A stretch of DNA of 64,000 nucleotides from Basidiobolus meristosporus CBS 931.73. Lineage: Eukaryota; Fungi; Basidiobolomycota. A program made the position numbers and the translations under genes. The stretch covers positions 106,904-170,903 of the forward strand of contig MCFE01000105.1 of NCBI GenBank assembly GCA_002104905.1. Direction: 5' to 3'. Positions 27,456-64,000 of the stretch are shown here, piece by piece (the stretch's first letter is position 1; every line of letters begins with the position of its first letter). The notes below the pieces were generated by a model. The model was not told where the DNA came from. It saw only the letters and a list, made by a program, of their open reading frames with translations, and searched no databases.

Positions 27456-29444
27456 TTAGTTCTTCTTCTCCTCGTTGTCAACAACAGTCTCGCCGTTAGG
27501 GGCGTTGTTGGCATCTTGGGCAGCACGGTTCTTGTAGACAGCCTCGAACAACTTGAGGGAAGCTTGTTGGAGCTCGTTGGTACCCTTGCGAAGTTCCTCG
27601 GGGTCAGCCTCCTCACCGAGGGCAACGGATTCACGCAATTTGCTGATTTGCTCCTTGATCTTCTTGGCCTCCTCTTGGTCAACTTGTTCCTTGAAGTCGT
27701 TCATGTGCTTCTCGGTCTCGTTGATGGCGGACTCGGCGTTGTTGGTGGCTTCGATAGCGGCCTTGCGCTTGGCATCGCTCTCGGCGAATTGCTCGGCGTT
27801 CTTGACCATGTTCTCAATCTCGTCCTTGCTCAAGCCAGAGGAGGCAACAATGGACATGGATTGATCGCGGCCAGTGGCCTTATCCTTGGCACCGACGTTA
27901 ACGATACCATCAGCATCAATATCAAAGGAAACCTCGATTTGAGGAACACCACGAGGAGCGGGGGCAATGCCAGTAAGGTTGAAGTCACCGAGGAGCTTGT
28001 TGTCACGGCAGAGTTCACGCTCACCTTGGTAAACCTTGACTTGGACTTGGGTTTGGCCATCGGCGGCAGTGGAGAAGACTTGAGACTTCTTGGTGGGGAT
28101 GGTGGTGTTACGGTTGATAAGACGAGTGAACACACCACCCAAGGTCTCAATACCAAGGGAAAGAGGGGTAACATCCAAGAGAAGGATATCAGTTACGGAA
28201 CCAGACAAGACACCACCTTGAATAGCGGCACCGATGGCAACGGCTTCATCGGGGTTGACGCTCTTTCCGGGCTCCTTGCCGAACAATTCCTTGACGGTCT
28301 CGATGGCCTTGGGCATGCGGGACATACCACCGACAAGAACGACTTCACTGATGTCAGCGGATTGGACACCAGCATCCTTCATGGCCTTTCTGCAGGGCTC
28401 GAAAGTACGCTCCAACAAAGGCTTGGTCATAGCCTCGAACTTGGAACGGGTGAGCTTCATGTTGATGTGCTTGGGACCGGTGGCATCAGCAGTGATGTAA
28501 GGAAGGTTGATGTCAGTTTGGAGAGTGGAGGAGAGTTCGATCTTGGCCTTCTCACAGGCTTCACGAATACGTTGGATGGCCATTCTGTCGTTGGTGAGAT
28601 CAATACCCTCGGTTTGCTTGAAGTCGCCAACAATTTGGTTGACGAGGTGGATATCGAAATCTTCACCACCCAAATGGGTGTCACCGTTGGTGGACTTGAC
28701 TTCGAAGACACCATTCTGGATTTCCAAAATGGAGATATCGAAGGTACCACCACCGAGATCGTAGATGGCAACAACCTTGTCTCCGACCTTGTCCAAACCG
28801 TAGGCAAGGGCAGCGGCGGTAGGCTCGTTGATGACACGAAGAACATCGAGACCAGCGATCTTTCCGGCATCCTTGGTGGCTTGACGCTGGGCGTCGTTGA
28901 AGTAAGCGGGAACGGTAATGACTGCTTGGGTGATCTTCTTGCTAAGGAAAGACTCGGCGGTATCCTTCATTTTACCCAAAACGAAGGCACCGATTTGACT
29001 GGGGGAGTACTTGGTACCTCTGGCCTCAACCCAAGCATCACCGTTGGTGTGCTTGACAATCTTGTAGGGGACGGCCTTGATGTCGTTTTGGACCTCATGG
29101 TCATTGAAGTTACGACCGATCAAACGCTTGGTAGCGAAGAGGGTGTTCTCAGGGTTGACAACAGCTTGACGCTTGGCAGCTTGACCAACAAGAAGCTCAC
29201 CTTCCTTGGTGAAGGCAACAACGGAAGGAGTGGTTCTGGTACCCTCGGAGTTCTCCAAGATTCTGGGGTTCTTGCCGTCCATGATGGCAACGCAGGAGTT
29301 GGTGGTTCCCAAATCGATACCAATTACGGAGCCATTGGCAGTGCTGTAGTTACGTGCAAGAACACCAAGAGCAGCGCTCTTTTGACGGAACAATTTGGTG
29401 GCGTTCAAAGCAGAAGCCTGGGCGACTTTAGAAATGCTATACAT
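27456..29444 (-). CDS. SSC1: Mitochondrial Hsp70, intronless
   Basis: Presequence-like N-terminus (MYSISKVAQ), [36 protein letters not shown]. DnaK-like, with no EEVD terminus. Confidence 0.96.
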
Positions 29445-30781
29445 ATTGAAAGCTGTTTCGGTAAAAAGAAACCTTGAGAGAAACAAGAAGCAGTATCGAC
29501 TCCACCCGACAATTGGCAATATTTATAGTCTGTCCCCGAGACAAGTGAATTTGTTCGTTCAGATTCCAAAGTGAACAGGTCCAATATTTGCTCAAAAGCG
29601 AAAAAATTTCTTTTGCCTAAATCGGTATCCCAACGCAACTGAGATGTCGGATTTGAAACTTTCAGTAACCAATTTAAACTTAACTCCGTATTTCAATTTT
29701 TCGTGGCTGTATTTCAATATACCGGTACTAATCTACAGTTTATCCGATGAGCATTTCACCTCACCAAACCCTGTCCGATATCACGACTCGCAGGCAATGT
29801 GCGCAGTCTCCTGGTCTCTGAATGTGTCATCTCTTAAGTAGCCGCTTCCACAGCTATCTGATTGAAATGTGGCTGAATCAAGGCGGTAATTTACATATGG
29901 TATCAATATCAAGGCTTACCAATGGAGTAGGTAAGCCCCTCTCAACCCGATCTATGACCCGAAGATTTTGGGGCGGTCACTCATTTGTACTGATTTAAAA
30001 TATGATGTTTCTTTTGTGATCAAATACCAACCTCTCCCTCGTTGTTGCTACGGTTACTCGTGCCAATGGGAGTCTCATCAAAAGAAGGCGCAGCCATCTA
30101 TTGCTGGCCCTTCCGAAAGAACACCCTTCTGATTGGTCCATCGCTGCCCTACCCATGCTAAATATCGGCTCGTCCATAATAAGAAAATCAAGTGAATACG
30201 TAAGCGCTGCGGAGTAGTTGAAGCAGTTACACCTAACTGGCCACGTATCCAATTAATCTCGAACTTTCCCCATCTTTCGCTCTCATCCAAACGGGTCAAC
30301 CTGCAGATTTGACTCACAACCTGATCGCATAGAGAATAGCGGGGTCTCACGGAATTCTCCGCTGTGATAATACACATCAATTTAATTCGGAATAAGTTTT
30401 GACTTTTTCGGATTCCCCAAGGTCCATGATGTCAGATTGAAGGGGCCACTCAAACCCAGGAGGTCGTGAGATTTAGGTGTAGCGTGTTAACCACCCATAT
30501 TAGGGCCGATTGGTATCTTGGGATAATCTTTTGATTCTGCGCCACATCTTTCAGGGTAATTTACGTCATTTATATGCGTCCAAGTGCTCGGTGGATTCGA
30601 GCGGATGGTGTTTTTGACAAAGCGTTGGCGACATTTATTCAAACTGACCGGTGTACATAAAACATATATATTTCAAGATTACTTACATCCCATGGATTGA
30701 TAGATTCAAAATGCTTTCTACGGGTGGCGATATTGTCATCGTGTCCACTAGGATATCAGTACGCTTATGCGGGTTATCCGT

Positions 30782-55160: not shown

Positions 55161-55849
55161 CGGCTCAAACGGAATTGGCTGATAAGAGCACTATGAATGA
55201 TTCCATGGTTTCATTTATTGGCCAGAGAATGATTGAATCTGGTTCAGAAAATTCCAGTTCCAATGTATAATATGCGCAGTTTAATTGAGTGAAGTGTTTA
55301 TAAGAGGGAATATCAGAATAGATTAGTCAAGAACAGAAGAAATCCCTGGTAACTTCTGTATCATTCCATTAGAAAATTGACTCTACAATTGCTTCCTCAT
55401 GGAGCGCTTATTGTATTGAGTAAATTCCCGGACTAGTAGGAATAAGGGTTAGCCTTATAGGGTTAGGGGGGAAGCAGTCACCAACAGGTGAAATCTTTAT
55501 TTCAAATGAAACAAAGAAGCCAGCGCTACTGTTGTAGCTTTGATACAAGAGTGTGTAGCTGAGGTGAATTGGTCAGTAACTGTAAAAAAATTAAGAAAAG
55601 GCCAGCAGGATACCATCATAATATCAGCTGAATTCCAAGTTTCTCAAAACTGACAACTCTCAATATCTCAGATACTAGCTGTTGGGCAGACAAGCAGATT
55701 TATTTTCCAAGAGGAGACTAGGCCAAATAGCATTCACACTAAATTTGGCAATCAGCTGCCTACAACTTCTACCAAAAATTGCAATTGAAAACTTAAACAA
55801 AAACACTAGCTGAATCCCAGCAAAGTACCATTAGAATACCAGCAGAATA

Positions 55850-56181
55850 TGTTGTAAGAGTCTTGGAGATATTGGAAGTGATTGGGAGAACAAGTAGATT
55901 ATGTGGTTTTCACTTAATGATTTATTGATTGTAAAAGTAGTATTTATACTTTTACCTGGTCTTGGCATAACAAACACGTAGAATAGGTTAAGGAAGGTCC
56001 CAAGAACATGTGTGCAAAGTTTGGGGCTGTTTGGACAACTTTGAGAATTTTCATGTTCTGGGTAAATATTCTAAGTAAATCCCGACAAGGAATTTGGTCA
56101 GTATTTTCTAGGATTTGAAGGTTATGATCTAAGTGACTAAGTTAGGTGAATAATTAGGTGGAAATACAAATTTTTACAACA
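55850..56181 (-). repeat. Copia 3' LTR (332 bp, TGTTGTAA...TTACAACA termini)
   Basis: 8-bp terminal inverted repeat. Aligns without indels to 63458-63784. Left flank GAATA is the candidate TSD. Confidence 0.93.
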
Positions 56182-56190
56182 CTCCCACTC
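56182..56190 (-). promoter_or_regulatory. Copia polypurine tract (GAGTGGGAG)
   Basis: Purine-rich run immediately before the TGTTG of the 3' LTR on the minus strand. Confidence 0.75.
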
Positions 56191-56192
56191 AG

Positions 56193-59100
56193 CTAAATGT
56201 TCATACTGACTAGTCCTAATTTTGACCTAAGATATTCAAACTTGTCTCTAGCTAATGGTTTGGTAAATATGTCTGCAATCATTTCATCTGTAGGACAGTA
56301 AACTAAGCTAACTAAGTTATTCTCTATAGCTTCACATATGAAATGATGTCTAATATCTATGTGCTTGGTTCTAGCATGAAAAGTTGGATTTCTACCTAAT
56401 TGTATACATCCTTGATTATCTTGAAATAAAGTAATAGGCGTTTTTTGACATAGGCCTAAATCTGTAAACAGTTTTCTTAACCACATTGCTTCTTTTGTAG
56501 CCTCACAGGCTGCCATATACTCTGCCTCTGTGGTGGAAAGTGCTACGGTTGGTTGTTTTCTTGAATTCCATGAAATTGCTCCTTTACAGTAAAGAAAGGT
56601 GTATCCTGTGGTGGATCTTCTGTCTTCCAAATTTTGTCCCCAATCAGCATCAGAGTATCCCACAAGATCCTGTTCTGAATCCTTATAAGTGTATCTTAAG
56701 CAGATATCAGCAGTTCCTTTTAGGTATCTAAAAATCCGCTTAACTGCTGCAATATGATCAGATCCATAATTCTGATTATGTTGGCTGACAACTCCCACTG
56801 AATATGAGATATCTGGACGTGTTCCAAGCATGATATACATCAGACTGCCGACCATAGATTGATAAGGAAAGTCAGGGCTTTCAGATGGCACCAAGCTCTC
56901 TTGATTTGGTTGAGTTTTGACCAAGTTAAGGTTTGTCTCCATTGGGGTAGCTGCTGGTTTACAGTCTTCCATTTTGTACTTCTTTAGTATATCTTGAATA
57001 TACTTGGATTGGCTTAGGGTGATAGTCTGGGTATTTCTGTCTATGGAGAACTTAATTCCTAAGTAGTAACTAAGTTCTCCTAGATCGGACATCTTGAACT
57101 CCTTATATAGGCTGGATTTAGTCTCTTCCAATGTTTCTAGGTTATTGGCGGCTATAATAAGATCATCCACATATAGAGCTAATAGAACTGGATTTGCTCT
57201 ATCTGGCTTATAGTATATACTATAGTCAGCATTACTTCTTTTGAAACTCAAGGATTCCAAATAAGAATCTATCTTGCAATTCCAGGCTCTTGGTGATTGT
57301 TTGAGACCATATAGTGACTTTTTAAGCTTGCAGACCAAATGGGGGTTATCTTGGTCAACAAACCCATCAGGCTGGTCCATATACACGTCCTCATCAAGTT
57401 CTCCATTCAAAAATGCAGTTTTTACATCCATTTGATGAATAAAAAACTTATATTTGGCTGCAATAGCCAATATTAATCTGATGGAATTAAACTTGGCTAC
57501 CGGTGCAAAGGTCTCAGTATAGTCAAGTCCTTTTGTTTGAGAGTATCCTTTGGCTACAAGTCTTGCTTTGTATCTTTCAATTGTACCATCAGCCTTGTAT
57601 TTTGTCTTGAAGACCCATCTGCATCCAATTGATTTTTGGCTGATTGGTAATTTGACTAAGTCCCAAGTTTGATTTTCCATCAGTGCCTGATATTCCTCAG
57701 TCATTGCAGATCTCCAAAACTTTGTCTGAGGGCTATTTAGGGCCTCTTTTACAGTCTGGGGTTCATCAATATGGACTGAATAGGCATAGGCTAAGTTTGT
57801 ACCCTCATTGATATAGTAATTTCGGCTATTTCTTGTCCGATTTGATCTCCAGGCATTTGATACTGGAATGATCACTTCTGGGATATTCCTGGGCACTGAT
57901 TCTGGCTGAACCATGGTTGTAGAGTCCTCTGGAGTGAAAAAATTTTCATTGTTTTGCTCTGATTCAATCCTGACAATTGGTGGACTTGAGATCAAATTTT
58001 TGTCATCATCTGATGTCATTTTTTGTGAAAATTTTGAATTTTCATCAAACAACACATCCCTGGACTTGATAAGCTTCTTTGCTTTGTTATTGTAGAGTCT
58101 GTATGCCTTACTCTCATTGCAGTAGCCCAAAAATATGCATTTTACACTTTTTAGCTCAAATTTTGACTGATTTCCGGCCAGTTTTTTGGCATATGCTGTA
58201 CACCCAAATATTCTTAGATGTTCTGCACTTGGTCTGTATCCATACCATGCTTCAAATGGAGTAGAATCACAAAGTATTCTGTTATAACTCCTATTTTTAA
58301 GATATACAGCAGTGGCAACTGATTCCGCCCAAAAATCATAGGATAATTTTTGATCATGGATCATAGATCTTGCCATATCAATTATTGATCTGTTAGCTTG
58401 TTCTGATACTCCATTTTGCTGTGGGGAGTATGGTACAGTAGTCTCTTGCTTTATCCCATGAACTTTGCAGAAGTGGATGAAGAGTTTTGAGGTATATTCT
58501 CCACCATTGTCAGAGCGTATTTTCTTGATTTTTTCACCAGTTTCTCTCTCCACCATGGCTTTAAACTCCCTGAACTTAGACAGAGCTTCTTCCTTTCTCT
58601 CCATGAAGTAGACCCATGTGTATCTTGTATAATCATCAATAAAAGTGATTAAATACTTCATCCCACCTAAGGATAAATTTTGCATAGGTCCACACAGATC
58701 TGAGTGAATTAGATCTAATTTTTTCTTAGTTTTGATTAACCCAGAGCTCTTGAACGGTTGTCTGGCTTGTTTCCCATATATGCAGGCTTCACAGTGCTCC
58801 AAATTAGCTGGGGGATCAATTTTCACTCCAGAAATTAGCTGATCTTTGATCATTTTACGCAAATAATCAAAATTGATGTGTCTAAATCTCCTGTGCCAAA
58901 GCATTGGTGTTTCTTCATTTAAGTTACTTATATTGGCTTCCAGATATGATGGAATATAAGTCAACTTGTATAGATTCTGATCTCTGATGCCCGATGCAAT
59001 ATGAGCACCATTTTGATCAGTGATCCTGCATCCAGAATTGTCAAGACTGAAACTGAGTCCTTCTGCTGTGGCCTTGCTTACAGAGAGTAGGTTCTTGGCT

Positions 59101-59557
59101 ATTGCTGGTACATAGAGTACTTCTTTAAAGGTCAGTGTATGGCTTCCTTTGCTGCTTCTAAGGTTTACTTGGATAGTTCCTTCTCCCACTGCATCAAGTG
59201 TTCTATTGTCACCCATCAAAACCTTCTTAATTGGAATATCTTGATATTGGGTAAAAAGTTCTTTTTGGTGTGTAAAGTGTTGAGAAGCTCCAGAGTCAAT
59301 ATACCATGTCTGAGAATCCTTGTTTGTGGTCATATTTAGTGCAGATATGAATAGTCTATCTTCAGTTGTTGCAGCATTTCCATATTCAGGCTTCTTTTGC
59401 TGATAATCTCTCTTTTTCAAACACCGGTCTGATGTGTGTCCTTTCCTTTTGCAGTAGTTGCAAAATAGGTTGTTGTTGCCTTTGTAGGGTCTTGGGTACC
59501 TCTTTTGTTGGTTATCATTGCTTAATGAAGCATTTGCTTCTTCCTTCTTATTGGCGC
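56193..59557 (-). pseudogene. Copia gag zinc knuckle and pol (PR, IN, RT, RNase H), open but cut off from the gag start
   Basis: CNYCKRKGHTSDRC, WYIDSGASQHF, HSDLCGP, SDNGGEY, PQQNGVSE, QMDVKTAFLNG, LYVDDL, GYSDADW, STTEAEY. Confidence 0.95.
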
Positions 59558-60361
59558 TGTGGTGGTGTAGAGGTACTCCTGGGAGAAGCTACACAACTCA
59601 AGGTGTGTGAGGTGTCTGATGGGTGCAATAACCTCTGTGTCTAAACTGCTGGTGTCTTTGTCAATATGTTACTATGGTAAAAGCTCCTGCTTCTCTAGCT
59701 TCCTAGGTGCTCCAAGTGTCTCCAAAGGCCTCTGTGTGTCTTGTGCACTACCCTGAAAAGCTCCTTGATGGCAGGTCTGAGATGTACTGTTGAAGGCAGG
59801 TGCAGTGATCAGCTGCTAATCAATAAGGAAGAAGTGTTACTGATAGAAGGGATGATTTATTGATGAGGGATTACTTTCCCTTAAATACTTTTCCTGATTG
59901 CCAAGTGATTACTAATAACAAGGTTCTAGAACATTCTAGGTATCAGTGGAATTCTTGATGACATCACAATGAGCTAAAATATGCCAAGAATGTCCTGGAA
60001 GGATCTAAAGGGCACAGCACATCCAACCAATCAGGAATCAGTAGTCTGAAACCTGTGCAACATAGAAATACCATATATGGTATTGAAATGGTAGAGATGG
60101 TAACACAGACCTAGGTCATGTGTCACGGGTACTGACGCGGGTACTTGCCTTATACAGATACATCAACTGATCACAAAGCTGAATAACATCTGGAAATAAC
60201 TAATGCTAATAACTAATCAGGGTAAACATCATATGGGGATAATACTGATAATATGGGCAAAAGAAGAATGGGATAATACTGATAAGATAAAATATGGATA
60301 AGTATATCATAATGACTATATGAATAAACTTGTCTGTGGGAGGTATGTTTACCCTACCACA
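59558..60361 (-). repeat. 3' LTR of the nested element (804 bp)
   Basis: TGTGGT/ACCACA termini. Purine/G-rich PPT-like AAGTGGGGGGTGGA abuts it on the minus strand (60362-60375). Confidence 0.85.
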
Positions 60362-60439
60362 TCCACCCCCCACTTGAGCTAAAAAGTTTCAGGGAACTTT
60401 TTAGCTAACCACTGTAAGTTTGGAGAACAAAGTGCTCTC

Positions 60440-62296
60440 TCAGTCTTCCTCAATGAAGCCACCTGTCCTTTCTTGAGATAGAAATCTACATGATGTCATT
60501 GATTGGATATTGTTTGAGTCCACACCACAGAAGGTTGCTGTTAGTCCTGGGCTCTCTGAGTATATAGTATACCATGCTGAACCATCTGGGTAGTTCACTG
60601 CAGTTGCTCTTGCTTTTACTTCCCATGGTCTTCCAAGAAGTAATTCAAAGTTAGCCTTTGCACAAATGAATACTGGGATCTCATGGGGTATTCCTTCAAT
60701 GATGAGAGGGAAGCTGTGAATAATTCCTAAAAGCTCTGATTGCCCTGAGTTGGCATCCTTCATGCTCCAATTGATATTGGTGTCTATGGGCAATAGGTCT
60801 TTGCATGGTAGTTGTTTCCAAGCCTCCAAAGGCATCACACATATCTCAGATCCACTGTCTATATGACATAGGATTTCTTGATTATGCACAGTTCCTGTAG
60901 TTGTTGCAGTTGCCACTGAGTAGTAGTGTTTCTGGCTTTGATGCAGCTTACTGATATCTTGGCTTCCTTGAACTGTCCTGACCTGGTTGCCTTGAGTTGC
61001 TTCAATTGGATGCTTTCTTATTCTGATATGCTCATCCAGAGTCTTTCTTACAGATGGTGATACACTGAGTAGCTCTCCAACCTTGATTGATATGTTGCTT
61101 CCTAGTATATGACTTGTCAGAGCCTCTGGGGTACCATTTTGCTTGACTCTAGGCTGCATGTGGTAGTTGTTGGCCTTGGCAGACTCTTGTAAAATTAATG
61201 GGGGTGATGCTTTCTTCTCAATCACAACTTCTGGCTCACATCTTAGTACTTTTGTTGCTGGGCCTGGATTAGCCATTTTTTCAGGATGGTGTCTCTTTGA
61301 AGCATAAATTGAAGCTATATGATCTTGGGCCTCTCTGGGGTCCTCATAGTCAAAGTTCAGAACTTCAGCTGGATCAAAGTAGTCAGGATCTTCTTCTTCA
61401 TGGAGGTGAACCTTTCTTGTTTGAGAGGTGACTTGCTTGTAGTGAACTCTCATTCCTCCTTGTCCAAATGCTGTGGATAATTTGTCACCATGCTTACTGA
61501 CTATGTATCCCTGAGGACTATATAGGACATCACCTGTGGATAGTAATGACTGAAGCTCTTGGCAATTTCTCTTGGAATGGTTGGCAGAGTCACACCACAT
61601 GCATGTATATTTGACTTCTTTCTCTACTGGCTTCTGACCATATGCTTTGCTGGCAAGTAGCAAAGAGAGTTTCTCTAGTTGCTGTGTTGGCTCCTGAATT
61701 TGAGTGCTTTGATTGCTGGGATTAAGTATGTCTTGGCTATCTTGGTTTTGTTCTGGGCTTAAAAGAAGCTTTCTGATTGGTGAGGTTTCTTCAGGGGCAA
61801 GTAGAATCTGCTTAGCTAACTGAAATGCAGGCAGTGAACTCATAGCTTTCACAGTAGGATTGTTTTCAATCCTTCTCACCAGGCCTTCTGGTAGTGCTCT
61901 GAGCAGATAGGCAGATAAAGTCAGATCAGTGATAATGCCTTGGGCTTTCAGTGACTCTCCAATTTGCTCAAGGCCACTCAAGTATTCTTTCAATGGTAGC
62001 AGCTTAAACTTGCTATAAGCAAAGTTCTCCAAGTCTTTAAGTGTGTAGTCAACTTGTCTCTCTCCGTATTCATCAATCAAGTAGCTCTTCAAGAGGGTCC
62101 AATTTGTCAGCAGATCATTTCTTTCATATAAAGAGAGCATGATCTCATCAGTGCTGTAGGGGGGCATCTCTTCAGCCATAATGGCCTCAGGTATTTTGTG
62201 GGCTCTGCAGAAAAGTTCCCACCTCTTGATGAAAGCTTTGACTTTAGTTCCATCAAAGAAAGGGGTTCCTTGCATTCCTGGTAAAGGTAGATCCAT
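60440..62296 (-). CDS. Gag-aspartic protease polyprotein of the nested element (618 aa, intact, no RT/IN)
   Basis: PFFDGTKVKAFI gag start, CMWCDSANHSKRNC zinc knuckle, HIDSGSEIC catalytic motif, ELLLGRPW. Confidence 0.88.
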   Translation of the reverse strand: MDLPLPGMQGTPFFDGTKVKAFIKRWELFCRAHKIPEAIMAEEMPPYSTDEIMLSLYERNDLLTNWTLLKSYLIDEYGERQVDYTLKDLENFAYSKFKLLPLKEYLSGLEQIGESLKAQGIITDLTLSAYLLRALPEGLVRRIENNPTVKAMSSLPAFQLAKQILLAPEETSPIRKLLLSPEQNQDSQDILNPSNQSTQIQEPTQQLEKLSLLLASKAYGQKPVEKEVKYTCMWCDSANHSKRNCQELQSLLSTGDVLYSPQGYIVSKHGDKLSTAFGQGGMRVHYKQVTSQTRKVHLHEEEDPDYFDPAEVLNFDYEDPREAQDHIASIYASKRHHPEKMANPGPATKVLRCEPEVVIEKKASPPLILQESAKANNYHMQPRVKQNGTPEALTSHILGSNISIKVGELLSVSPSVRKTLDEHIRIRKHPIEATQGNQVRTVQGSQDISKLHQSQKHYYSVATATTTGTVHNQEILCHIDSGSEICVMPLEAWKQLPCKDLLPIDTNINWSMKDANSGQSELLGIIHSFPLIIEGIPHEIPVFICAKANFELLLGRPWEVKARATAVNYPDGSAWYTIYSESPGLTATFCGVDSNNIQSMTSCRFLSQERTGGFIEED

Positions 62297-62347
62297 GGTC
62301 TTGATAATTTGTTCTTTCTTAAGTCTTCTAGGGGCAGTTCAGTCAAA

Positions 62348-62365
62348 CCCCCCCGTTGGGTGCCA
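62348..62365 (-). promoter_or_regulatory. Primer-binding site of the nested element (TGGCACCCAACGGGGGGG), tRNA-Lys-like
   Basis: Lies 4 nt after the LTR end. Resembles the tRNA-Lys1,2 PBS TGGCGCCCAACGTGGGGC. Confidence 0.65.
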
Positions 62366-62369
62366 AATA

Positions 62370-62842
62370 TGTGGTGGTGTAGAGGTACTCCTGGGAGAAG
62401 CTACACAACTCAAGGTGTGTGAGGTGTCTGATGGGTGCAATAACCTCTGTGTCTAAACTGCTGGTGTCTTTGTCAATATGTTACTATGGTAAAAGCTCCT
62501 GCTTCTCTAGCTTCCTAGGTGCTCCAAGTGTCTCCAAAGGCCTCTGTGTGTCTTGTGCACTACCCTGAAAAGCTCCTTGATTAGCAGTTGATCACTGCAC
62601 CTGCCTTCAACAGTACATCTCAGACCTGCCATCAAGGAGCTTTTCAGGGTAGTGCACAAGACACACAGAGGCCTTTGGAGACACTTGGAGCACCTAGGAA
62701 GCTAGAGAAGCAGGAGCTTTTACCATAGTAACATATTGACAAAGACACCAGCAGTTTAGACACAGAGGTTATTGCACCCATCAGACACCTCACACACCTT
62801 GAGTTGTGTAGCTTCTCCCAGGAGTACCTCTACACCACCACA
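62370..62842. repeat. Fold-back palindrome replacing the 5' LTR: 212-bp perfect inverted arms (62370-62581 and 62631-62842) with a 49-bp spacer
   Basis: The arms are exact reverse complements by direct comparison. The left arm is identical to 59558-59769. Confidence 0.93.
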
Positions 62843-62846
62843 GCGC

Positions 62847-63426
62847 TTGATTTTCTTAATTCTTCATCCAGGAGCCTTCCATATACGTAGTTTAAGGTCA
62901 AATCTTCAGTTCTGGACTCTAGGGCTGATACAAGGCCCTGAAACTTGTCTGTCAGGCTATTCAGGATGGTAACTATCACATCCTCATCAGTAGTTGGTAT
63001 GCCAACAGATTCCATCTCATCTACCAGCAGGGTAATTCTGTTAATTAGATTTTTCATTTCTTCTCCTGGCAGCATCTTTGTAGTAAAGAATTTTCTTCTA
63101 AGATACATTTTCTTGGCAGCTGAACATGACTGGTAGGTGTCTTCTAATGCCTTCCAGGCATTCTTTGCCGTTTATGCTCTTGAGCATTGAATTAGCAATT
63201 TGTCCTTGACATTAAGGCAAATGCAGTTAAAGGCACTTTGTTCTTTCTTCTGGTACTTCAAGGCTTCCTCTCCCACGTTTTTGGGAGGGCATTCTTCTCC
63301 CATGACAATATCCCAAAGGCCTCTTTCTTGTAGCAGCATCTTCATCTTCACCTTCCACACTTGGTAGTTAGATCCATCCAACTTTTCAGCAGAGGGAAAA
63401 ATTCCAGTAATAGCAGTAGTAGACAT
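62847..63426 (-). pseudogene. 5' part of Copia gag (UBN2-type), with a premature TAA at 63172-63174
   Basis: KLDGSNYQVWKVKMKMLL, then RA*TAKNAWKALEDTY in frame, continuing MYLRRKFF...RLLDEE. Confidence 0.9.
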
Positions 63427-63445
63427 TGCAGAGAGTGACAGCTCA

Positions 63446-63457
63446 GGGCTCATAACC
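63446..63457 (-). promoter_or_regulatory. Copia primer-binding site GGTTATGAGCCC (half-tRNAiMet type)
   Basis: Directly follows the LTR-terminal CAACA. Resembles the GGTTATGGGCCC PBS of copia-type elements. Confidence 0.8.
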
Positions 63458-63784
63458 TGTTGTAAGAGTCTTGGAGATATTGGAAGTGATTGGGAGGACA
63501 AGTAGATTATGTGGTTTTCACTTGATGATTTATTGAATGTAAAAGTAGTATTTATACTTTTACATGATCTTGGCATTATAAACATGTAGAATAGGTTAAG
63601 AAAGGTCCCAAGAACATGTGTGCAAAGTTTGGGGCTGTTTGGACAACTTTGAGAATTTTCATGTTCTGGGTAAATATTCTAAGTAAATCCCGACAAGGAA
63701 TTTGGTCAGTATTTTCTAGGATTTGAAGGTTATGATCTAAGTGACTAAGTTAGGTGAATAATTAGGTGGAAATACAAATTTTTA
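63458..63784 (-). repeat. Copia 5' LTR, lacking its outer 5 bp (CAACA on the + strand)
   Basis: Matches 55850-56176 with 9 substitutions, then runs into TTAGGG repeats. Confidence 0.93.
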
Positions 63785-64000
63785 GGGTTAGGGTTAGGGT
63801 TAGGGTTAGGGTTAGGGTTAGGGTTAGGGTTAGGGTTAGGGTTAGGGTTAGGGTTAGGGTTAGGGTTAGGGTTAGGGTTAGGGTTAGGGTTAGGGTTAGG
63901 GTTAGGGTTAGGGTTAGGGTTAGGGTTAGGGTTAGGGTTAGGGTTAGGGTTAGGGTTAGGGTTAGGGTTAGGGTTAGGGTTAGGGTTAGGGTTAGGGTTA
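63782..64000 (+). repeat. Telomeric array (TTAGGG)n, about 36.5 units to the window end
   Basis: Perfect hexamer repeat, G-rich strand running 5'->3' toward the end. Confidence 0.99.

What the first reader, a model, noticed from the sequence alone, without database searches (positions are those of the whole stretch)
62370..62842. Retroelement integrated with two U5 ends: 5' LTR replaced by a snap-back palindrome formed at a 5-bp microhomology
Seen: the PBS-adjacent LTR follows the 804-bp 3' LTR for 212 bp to TTGAT. It then continues as the reverse complement of LTR positions about 266 to 1. The intact LTR has TTGAT (59765-59769) and ATCAA (59819-59823) 49 nt apart, which exactly explains the junction and the spacer. 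About 540 bp of U3/R are gone, yet the outer end is a valid ...ACCACA flanked by the GCGC duplication, and the host frame is restored on removal. Inference: the DNA folded back before integration, plausibly the minus-strand strong-stop cDNA, and integrase used an inverted U5 end in place of U3. The 212-bp perfect hairpin should also be a fragile site and a dsRNA/siRNA source, about 1 kb from the chromosome end.
Basis: partly seen in the sequence, partly recalled or inferred. Interest (0 to 1): 0.78.

Follow-up and report, generated by a model that had tools for sequence, protein, structure and literature searches.

The report
Retrotransposon with a fold-back 5' end
A young jumping gene near a fungal chromosome end has a perfect 212-bp hairpin-shaped repeat where its left terminal repeat should be, most likely because its first DNA copy folded back on itself before insertion; this is a rare natural trace of a copying error known mainly from test-tube work, not a new biological system.

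Summary
A 3,285-bp LTR element (minus strand, 59558-62842) sits in the gag of an older Copia, about 940 bp from the TTAGGG telomere. It is flanked by a 4-bp GCGC duplication, and removing it restores the Copia reading frame. Its 3' LTR is a normal 804 bp. Its 5' "LTR" is a perfect 212-bp arm, a 49-nt spacer and a second 212-bp arm. The junction lies at TTGAT/ATCAA.

The element is not Copia. It is a pol-less gag-protease element of Ty3/gypsy type.

Best explanation (about 0.65): minus-strand strong-stop DNA primed on itself, or on a second such molecule. It copied back to its tRNA end and so gained a PBS copy. It then stood in for plus-strand strong-stop DNA, and the cDNA was integrated through two U5 ends. 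Three things fit this: spacer orientation, the exact outer terminus, and the closeness of the two breakpoints.

A replicative double template switch after integration remains possible. So does an assembly error. Reads and other copies could not be examined.

Other notes of this scan list several fold-back retroelements and normal 3,616-bp copies in this genome; I could not check them. The fragility and siRNA claims are untested.

The parts
59554..59557 (.). Left copy of the 4-bp target-site duplication, GCGC
59558..60361 (-). Intact 804-bp 3' LTR of the inserted element (TGTGGT...ACCACA). In element sense it has TATTTAAG at LTR position 475 and AATAAAT at 501
59765..59823 (.). In the intact LTR: TTGAT (59765-69) and ATCAA (59819-23), 49 nt apart. 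This is the inverted 5-nt microhomology used for the fold-back. The stretch has no significant fold of its own
60362..60375 (-). Polypurine tract directly upstream of the 3' LTR
60440..62296 (-). 618-aa ORF with a gag CCHC zinc knuckle and a DSG aspartic protease. No RT, RNase H or integrase. Distant full-length relatives have the Ty3/gypsy domain order
62348..62365 (-). Primer-binding site (TGG...), 4 nt after the LTR end
   Evidence: tRNA identity not tested (no tRNA gene in the window)
62370..62581 (-). Inner arm next to the PBS. It is the last 212 bp of the LTR in normal orientation, 212/212 identical to 59558-59769
62582..62630 (.). 49-nt spacer. It is LTR sequence contiguous with the outer arm, so inverted relative to the inner arm. 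One mismatch to the 3' LTR (equivalent of 59812)
62631..62842 (+). Outer arm: an inverted copy of the U5 end, ending exactly at ...ACCACA next to the target-site duplication
62843..62846 (.). Right copy of the target-site duplication, GCGC
55843..63750 (-). Older host Copia element. LTRs at 55843-56142 and 63451-63750 are 96% identical. Gag pieces lie at 62830-63108 and 63172-63585, pol at 56193-59420. It has the same orientation as the insert, so its transcripts would read into the palindrome
63782..64000 (+). TTAGGG telomere repeats

Best explanation
This is an aberrant reverse-transcription product that was integrated as one unit.

LTR positions are given in element sense, where 1 is the U3 start and 804 is the U5 end.

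1. Minus-strand strong-stop DNA was primed by a tRNA at the PBS and copied U5 back to about position 539-544.
2. Its 3' end, ...ATCAA, paired with TTGAT 49 nt upstream. The partner was either the same strand or a second strong-stop molecule.
3. Reverse transcriptase extended it back to its own 5' end and into the tRNA. The resulting strand reads inverted-U5, loop, U5, PBS.
4. Because this strand ends in a PBS copy, it behaves like plus-strand strong-stop DNA. It made the second strand transfer onto a normal minus strand derived from the co-packaged second RNA.
5. Completing both strands gave a linear cDNA whose left end is an inverted U5 end, set by tRNA removal exactly as the right end is.
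6. Integrase processed both ends and inserted the cDNA with a 4-bp duplication. It was supplied in trans, because this element has no pol.

Shown: the structure, the single target-site duplication, the restored host frame, the microhomology and the spacer orientation. Inferred: every replication step.

The copy lacks U3, so it has no promoter of its own and was dead on arrival.
For: - One GCGC duplication and an exactly restored Copia frame show that the whole 3,285 bp entered in one event.
- The outer arm ends at the very last LTR base, as expected if its terminus was made the way a U5 terminus is made.
- Read 5' to 3' in element sense, the outer arm plus spacer is the sequence of strong-stop DNA starting at the U5/PBS border. 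The inner arm then continues without a break into the PBS and gag.
- The spacer is contiguous with the outer arm. This is the orientation the model predicts, and the opposite of a chromosomal break fold-back from the PBS side.
- 5-nt microhomology at a blunt random join is expected about 0.6% of the time. About 19% of possible 3' ends have such a partner inside the strong-stop strand.
- The two breakpoints are 54 nt apart in LTR coordinates. For two independent breakpoints this has probability 0.03-0.13.
- The U3 and inverted-U5 termini share TGTGGT and 10 of the first 12 bases, so one integrase could use both.
- Self-priming of strong-stop DNA, in competition with strand transfer, is documented in vitro for HIV-1; intra- or inter-annealing of strong-stop cDNA is proposed there as a cause of abortive products (PMC4668388).
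- Integration of aberrant template-switch products with a normal target-site duplication is documented in plants (PMC1950507).
Against: - There is no direct evidence: no reads, no other copies, no RNA 5' end, no VLP cDNA.
- The intact LTR has no stable hairpin at the site (z = -0.55). The fold-back therefore rested on about 5 bp with a 49-nt loop, which is weak.
- It is unknown whether position 539-544 is the RNA 5' end. TATTTAAG at 475 and AATAAAT at 501 allow a start further upstream, in which case the strand would have been an incomplete strong-stop DNA.
- Recombination between the perfect arms could flip the spacer later, which weakens the orientation argument.
- I found no paper reporting such an integrated product, so its feasibility in vivo is inferred.
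Confidence: 0.65

Rival explanations
1. Replication error after integration. A normal copy with two 804-bp LTRs was inserted. Later a nascent strand switched template twice. The first switch was at TGTGGT, which the U3 start and the inverted U5 end share. The second was back at TTGAT/ATCAA. Together they replaced LTR positions 7-592 with an inverted copy of positions 544-798.
For: It gives exactly the observed sequence, including the spacer orientation and the exact outer end. Microhomologies of 6 and 5 nt are present at both switch points. Fold-back and template-switch events with microhomology and spacers are well documented in chromosomes (PMC3907307, PMC10622511 and PMC11724301, listed).
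Against: It needs two precise switches, a return to register, and a 586-bp replacement. That is much larger than the short templated inversions reported at yeast breaks (mostly 5-34 bp, PMC11724301 abstract). The element is very young (1 difference in 266 nt against its 3' LTR), which leaves little time for a rare chromosomal event. Reverse transcription is far more prone to such errors; this last point rests on general knowledge.
Confidence: 0.12
2. Two cDNA molecules were involved. In one version, two copies inserted head to head at the same GCGC. In the other, one integration complex joined the U5 ends of two separate cDNAs. Either way, a microhomology-mediated deletion then removed everything between the two copies.
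For: The orientation and the TTGAT microhomology are compatible. Another note of this scan describes an inverted two-armed Gypsy remnant in this genome (s1-233538; not checked).
Against: It requires reuse of the same 4-bp target, or an unusual two-donor event. The two deletion endpoints would also have to fall within 54 nt of each other in LTR coordinates by chance, which has probability 0.03-0.13. There is no extra copy of the target-site duplication and no host loss.
Confidence: 0.05
3. Assembly or sequencing artefact. The true locus has a normal 5' LTR, and a chimeric or fold-back read or a consensus error created the palindrome.
For: The site is a repeat inside a repeat about 1 kb from a contig end, where coverage can be thin. 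Other notes of this scan list many retroelement palindromes in this assembly (not checked), which could point to a systematic artefact. Reads were not available.
Against: A missing-adapter fold-back read gives a palindrome with no spacer at a random point (general knowledge), and it does not rejoin the flank. Here the inverted arm ends at the exact LTR terminus. It is followed by the correct 4-bp duplication and by in-frame host sequence that runs through the Copia LTR to the telomere. The junction shows microhomology and a 49-nt loop, which is the mark of a polymerase priming event.
Confidence: 0.1
4. Chromosome-end break repaired by fold-back priming, the classical inverted duplication next to a healed end. 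It would be linked to the telomere healing 0.9 kb away.
For: The locus is subtelomeric. According to another note (s1-197492), the neighbouring Copia LTR is truncated and capped by telomere repeats.
Against: A fold-back of the centromere-side end predicts the spacer in the opposite orientation. It also predicts an inverted arm that runs on into the PBS and gag. Instead the arm stops at the LTR terminus and the undisturbed host sequence follows.
Confidence: 0.02

Closest known systems
Self-priming (snap-back) of retroviral minus-strand strong-stop DNA, e.g. the TAR-dependent case in HIV-1
   Same: The 3' end of strong-stop DNA pairs with an upstream stretch and is extended back along its template, in competition with the first strand transfer. 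The nucleocapsid chaperone normally suppresses this (PMC4668388, citing Guo et al. 1997).
   Different: It is known as an abortive in-vitro product driven by a stable hairpin. Here there is no stable hairpin, only 5 nt of pairing. The product seems to have been rescued by its PBS copy and integrated into a chromosome.
Complex LTR retrotransposon insertions made by abnormal template switching (Sabot and Schulman 2007, PMC1950507)
   Same: An aberrant reverse-transcription product integrated by integrase as one unit. It is recognised by a single flanking target-site duplication and near-identical LTR sequence.
   Different: Those have three LTRs in direct orientation and two interiors, produced by inter-RNA switching. 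This one has an inverted partial LTR and no U3 at the 5' end.
Pol-less gag-encoding non-autonomous LTR elements
   Same: LTRs, PBS and PPT around a single gag-type ORF with no RT or integrase. Such an element is mobilised in trans.
   Different: This one also keeps a protease. That class describes the carrier element, not the fold-back.
Chromosomal fold-back inverted duplications at double-strand breaks (PMC3907307, PMC10622511)
   Same: Inverted arms separated by a short spacer, with microhomology at the junction.
   Different: Those continue inward until a break and are paired with a terminal deletion. Here the arm stops at an integrase-type terminus with a target-site duplication, the host sequence is intact, and the spacer has the other orientation.
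Autointegration inversion circles of LTR retrotransposons (PMC7197481)
   Same: Aberrant cDNA forms that contain inverted segments next to an LTR.
   Different: They are circles made by integrase attacking its own cDNA. They would not give a linear insertion with two processed ends and a host target-site duplication.

Membership tests
LTR retrotransposon, Ty3/gypsy type | LTR with TG...CA ends, a PPT before the 3' LTR, and a PBS after the 5' LTR | tested here: met
   804-bp 3' LTR with TGTGGT...ACCACA ends, a PPT at 60362-60375, and a PBS starting TGG 4 nt after the U5 end. The 5' LTR is aberrant.
LTR retrotransposon, Ty3/gypsy type | Short target-site duplication made by integrase | tested here: met
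   GCGC on both sides; the host frame is restored on removal.
LTR retrotransposon, Ty3/gypsy type | Gag with zinc knuckle, then protease, RT, RNase H and integrase in that order | tested here: inconclusive
   This copy has only gag (CCHC) and protease (DSG; Asp_protease E = 0.029; DUF4100 below cut-off). Distant relatives at 24-30% identity carry PR, RVT_1, RNase H, Integrase_H2C2 and rve in gypsy order.
Copia/Ty1 (for the folded element) | Copia-type gag (Retrotran_gag_2) and RVT_2 with integrase before RT | tested here: not met
   Those domains are found only in the host element's ORFs, not in the 618-aa ORF.
Integrated self-primed strong-stop DNA product | The inverted segment begins exactly at the U5/PBS-side terminus and is contiguous through the loop; the copy continues into the PBS | tested here: met
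   The outer arm plus spacer is the reverse complement of the last 266 LTR bases. The inner arm of 212 bp runs on into the PBS.
Integrated self-primed strong-stop DNA product | Junction at a short inverted microhomology within the R-U5 strand | tested here: met
   TTGAT/ATCAA, 49 nt apart.
Integrated self-primed strong-stop DNA product | The 3' end of the folded strand coincides with the 5' end of the genomic RNA | not testable with these tools
   Only motifs are available: TATTTAAG at LTR position 475 and AATAAAT at 501, with the junction at 539-544. This needs 5' RACE or CAGE.
Integrated self-primed strong-stop DNA product | Other family copies have a normal 5' LTR (a one-off event) | not testable with these tools
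Other notes report 3,615-3,617-bp gag-protease elements in this genome, which matches 804+2008+804 = 3,616. I did not check them.
Chromosomal fold-back inverted duplication | The spacer is native to the centromere-side arm, the inverted arm runs on past the repeat, and distal sequence is lost | tested here: not met
   The spacer is native to the distal arm, the arm stops at the LTR terminus, and the distal host sequence is intact.
DIRS-like or Foldback-type elements with inverted terminal repeats | Inverted repeats at both ends as a family design; tyrosine recombinase or no RT-type ends; no LTR-type target-site duplication | tested here: not met
   The 3' LTR is in direct orientation to the inner arm. 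PBS, PPT and a 4-bp target-site duplication are present. No recombinase ORF was found.

The most novel reading that the evidence does not exclude
Self-primed strong-stop DNA can replace plus-strand strong-stop DNA in vivo and still give an integration-competent cDNA with two U5 ends. In this fungus the event recurs across retrotransposon families: other notes list several 5'-LTR palindromes, one of them twice at the same base just behind the TATA/AATAAA motifs. If that holds, the junctions mark transcript 5' ends, and the products form promoter-less hairpin loci. Read-through transcription would turn these loci into double-stranded RNA against their own family.
Probability: 0.2. Interest if true: 0.7.

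Novelty: new variant of a known kind. Interest (0 to 1): 0.5.

Why it matters
If the reading is right, this locus records three things.

- Strong-stop DNA self-priming, a reverse-transcription side reaction studied almost only in vitro, happens in a fungal virus-like particle.
- Its product can be rescued through its PBS copy.
- An integrase can insert a cDNA carrying two U5 ends with a normal target-site duplication.

It also gives a simple sequence signature: inverted U5, short loop, U5, PBS, and a single target-site duplication. A whole genome can be searched for this signature to measure how often the error happens and whether the junctions map transcript starts.

For the host, the result is a dead element with a perfect 212-bp inverted repeat near a telomere. 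That repeat may be unstable, and it may yield hairpin RNA if the surrounding Copia is transcribed. Both points are conjecture.

Tried and rejected
- **Other copies of the family.** There is no second copy of the LTR or ORF in the window. The sequence look-up in the scan's notes gave nothing.
- **Protein word search.** No hits for the 618-aa ORF. The full library search found only distant relatives of 30% identity or less.
- **A pre-existing hairpin that would drive the fold-back.** Not found (z = -0.55).
- **tRNA identity of the PBS.** There is no tRNA gene in the window. The tRNA-Lys assignment in other notes is unchecked.
- **Literature.** None found a report of an integrated LTR element with a snap-back 5' end. 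From memory, Olsen and Swanstrom 1985 (J Virol) reported inverted strong-stop-derived repeats in unintegrated avian retrovirus DNA, and Covey and Turner 1986 reported hairpin DNAs of cauliflower mosaic virus. Neither could be retrieved, so they remain unverified recollections.
- **Explanations rejected on the sequence.** These are the chromosomal break fold-back (wrong spacer orientation, intact distal flank), autointegration circles (cannot give a linear insert with a target-site duplication), and a DIRS or Foldback-type family design.
- I did not run a family scan on the joined, insert-removed Copia gag, because a joined sequence has no reference. It was only translated inside a script.

Full report
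**What is there.** The last 8 kb of the window is an old Copia element on the minus strand. Its LTRs lie at 55843-56142 and 63451-63750 and are 96% identical. It carries Copia gag, integrase and RVT_2 domains. It runs into TTAGGG telomere repeats from 63782. The rest of the window holds ordinary host genes, including an SDF transporter, Hsp70, a Mur-ligase-like gene and an AAA+ chaperone. Other notes of this scan name the genome as the fungus Basidiobolus meristosporus; I did not test that. It is not human DNA.

**The inserted element.** A second element lies inside the Copia gag at 59558-62842 (3,285 bp), also on the minus strand. Its parts are:
- a regular 804-bp 3' LTR at 59558-60361, with TGTGGT...ACCACA ends;
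- a polypurine tract at 60362-60375;
- a 2,008-bp interior with one 618-aa ORF at 60440-62296;
- a primer-binding site at 62348-62365.

The ORF has a CCHC zinc knuckle and a DSG protease motif. It gives a sub-threshold DUF4100 hit and a weak Asp_protease hit. It has no close relatives. The full library search found 634 distant relatives at 24-30% identity. The long ones among them carry PR, RVT_1, RNase H, Integrase_H2C2 and rve in Ty3/gypsy order, and the protein atlas agrees. The folded element is therefore a pol-less gag-protease element of Ty3/gypsy type. Copia is only its host.

**Check of the observation.**
- The arm next to the PBS, 62370-62581, is 212/212 identical to the U5 end of the 3' LTR.
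- It is followed by a 49-nt spacer and a 212/212 complementary outer arm at 62631-62842.
- The outer arm plus spacer plus 5 nt is the reverse complement of 59558-59823.
- The switch lies at TTGAT (59765-69) and ATCAA (59819-23).
- 538 bp of the LTR are absent.
- GCGC flanks both sides. Removing the insert and one GCGC restores a Copia frame that runs from about 63165 into the pol ORF.

One detail is new. The spacer differs from the 3' LTR at one base (59812 is G, the spacer copy has A). The repeat finder had rounded this to 100%.

**Mechanism.** LTR positions below are in element sense (1 = U3 start, 804 = U5 end). The top strand of the aberrant end reads: complement of 804 down to 539, then 598 up to 804, then the PBS and gag. 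The first segment, read 5' to 3', is the sequence of minus-strand strong-stop DNA starting at the tRNA/U5 border.

1. The 3' ATCAA of this strand can pair with TTGAT 49 nt upstream in the same strand, or in a second strong-stop molecule.
2. Extension then copies the strand back to its 5' end and into the tRNA, which adds a PBS copy.
3. Such a strand mimics plus-strand strong-stop DNA. It can make the second strand transfer onto a normal minus strand from the second packaged RNA.
4. The finished cDNA has an inverted U5 end on the left. That end is set by tRNA removal and integrase processing, exactly as the right end is.

The U3 start and the inverted U5 end share TGTGGT and 10 of the first 12 bases, so one integrase could take both. 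Because the element has no pol, RT and integrase came from a helper. Only the structure is shown; each step is inferred.

**Tests between models.**
1. A single target-site duplication and an exact host frame argue for one integration event.
2. The spacer is contiguous with the outer arm. The reverse-transcription model predicts this. Fold-back repair of a chromosomal break on the PBS side predicts the opposite, and also predicts an arm running on into gag. The caveat is that recombination between perfect arms could flip a spacer later.
3. The breakpoints are 54 nt apart in LTR coordinates. For two independent breakpoints (two insertions plus a deletion, or two donor cDNAs) this has probability 0.03-0.13.
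4. Microhomology of 5 nt or more at a random join is expected about 0.6% of the time, so a priming event is indicated. About 19% of possible 3' ends would find such a partner, so the site is opportunistic rather than special. The intact LTR has no stable hairpin there.
5. An assembly artefact would have to end the inverted arm at the exact LTR terminus and rejoin the true flank at a 4-bp repeat. That is unlikely, but it cannot be excluded without reads.

The one rival that gives the identical sequence is a double template switch after integration, using TGTGGT and TTGAT. I rate it lower because it needs two exact switches over hundreds of bases in a very young element (1 difference in 266 nt).

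**Open point.** It is not known whether position 539-544 is the RNA 5' end. TATTTAAG lies at 475 and AATAAAT at 501. By the usual layout of Metaviridae LTRs (PMC3601003), the second motif could be either a core promoter or the poly(A) signal. If the transcript starts upstream, the folded strand was a paused or truncated strong-stop DNA that could not transfer.

**Context from other notes (leads, unchecked).**
- Several windows of this genome hold 3,615-3,617-bp gag-protease-only LTR elements with identical LTRs. The arithmetic 804+2008+804 = 3,616 suggests they are normal copies of this family. If so, the palindrome is a one-off and not a family trait.
- One note reports that TGTGG...CCACA elements make 4-bp duplications (s1-194831), as seen here.
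- Others list fold-back retroelement structures elsewhere in the genome (s1-216258, s1-212647, s1-209792, s1-233538). So the scan has met related structures before on other DNA. Whether they share a cause, biological or technical, is open.

**Consequences.** The copy has no U3 and therefore no promoter of its own. The host Copia has the same orientation, so its transcripts would read through the palindrome. As RNA, the palindrome folds at -462 kcal/mol. Hairpin RNA and fragility are plausible, and closely spaced inverted repeats are known to be more recombinogenic (PMC10164571 abstract). Nothing here tests either.

**Literature.** Self-priming of strong-stop DNA is established in vitro (PMC4668388). 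Integration of template-switch products with a target-site duplication is established in plants (PMC1950507). I found no report of an integrated element with this architecture in ten searches.

**Limits.** Reads and the rest of the genome were out of reach. 

**Verdict.** This is a real and unusual, but single and non-functional, structure. It is best read as an integrated snap-back product of reverse transcription.

Noticed in passing
window 60440-62296 (-), with notes from other windows: Each follow-up on the 3,615-3,617-bp gag-protease-only elements said it could not tell whether they form a spreading family. Taken together, the notes list about ten such young copies, and this window adds an aberrant one. 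That points to an actively mobilised non-autonomous family. The sequences were not compared here.
   Followed up: partly
window 63108-63172 and 55843-63750: The host Copia is degenerate. Its gag is split into two ORFs by a stop near 63170, and its LTRs are only 96% identical. It is therefore much older than the insert.
   Followed up: partly
window 27456-29519 (-) and 27516-29477 (+): An intact Hsp70 gene has a 653-aa open frame on the opposite strand that matches Pfam NAD-GH (PF10712, E = 9e-159). From memory, this family is thought to consist of antisense translations of Hsp70 genes.
   Followed up: no
window 59812 versus 62588: The only difference between the palindromic end and the 3' LTR is a G/A change in the loop. 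It could be a reverse-transcriptase error, a later mutation, or a mark of two different co-packaged RNAs.
   Followed up: no
window 62366-62369: Four bases (TATT in element sense) separate the U5 CA end from the TGG of the PBS. The unintegrated cDNA would therefore carry about 4 extra bases for integrase to remove, more than the 2 usual in retroviruses.
   Followed up: no
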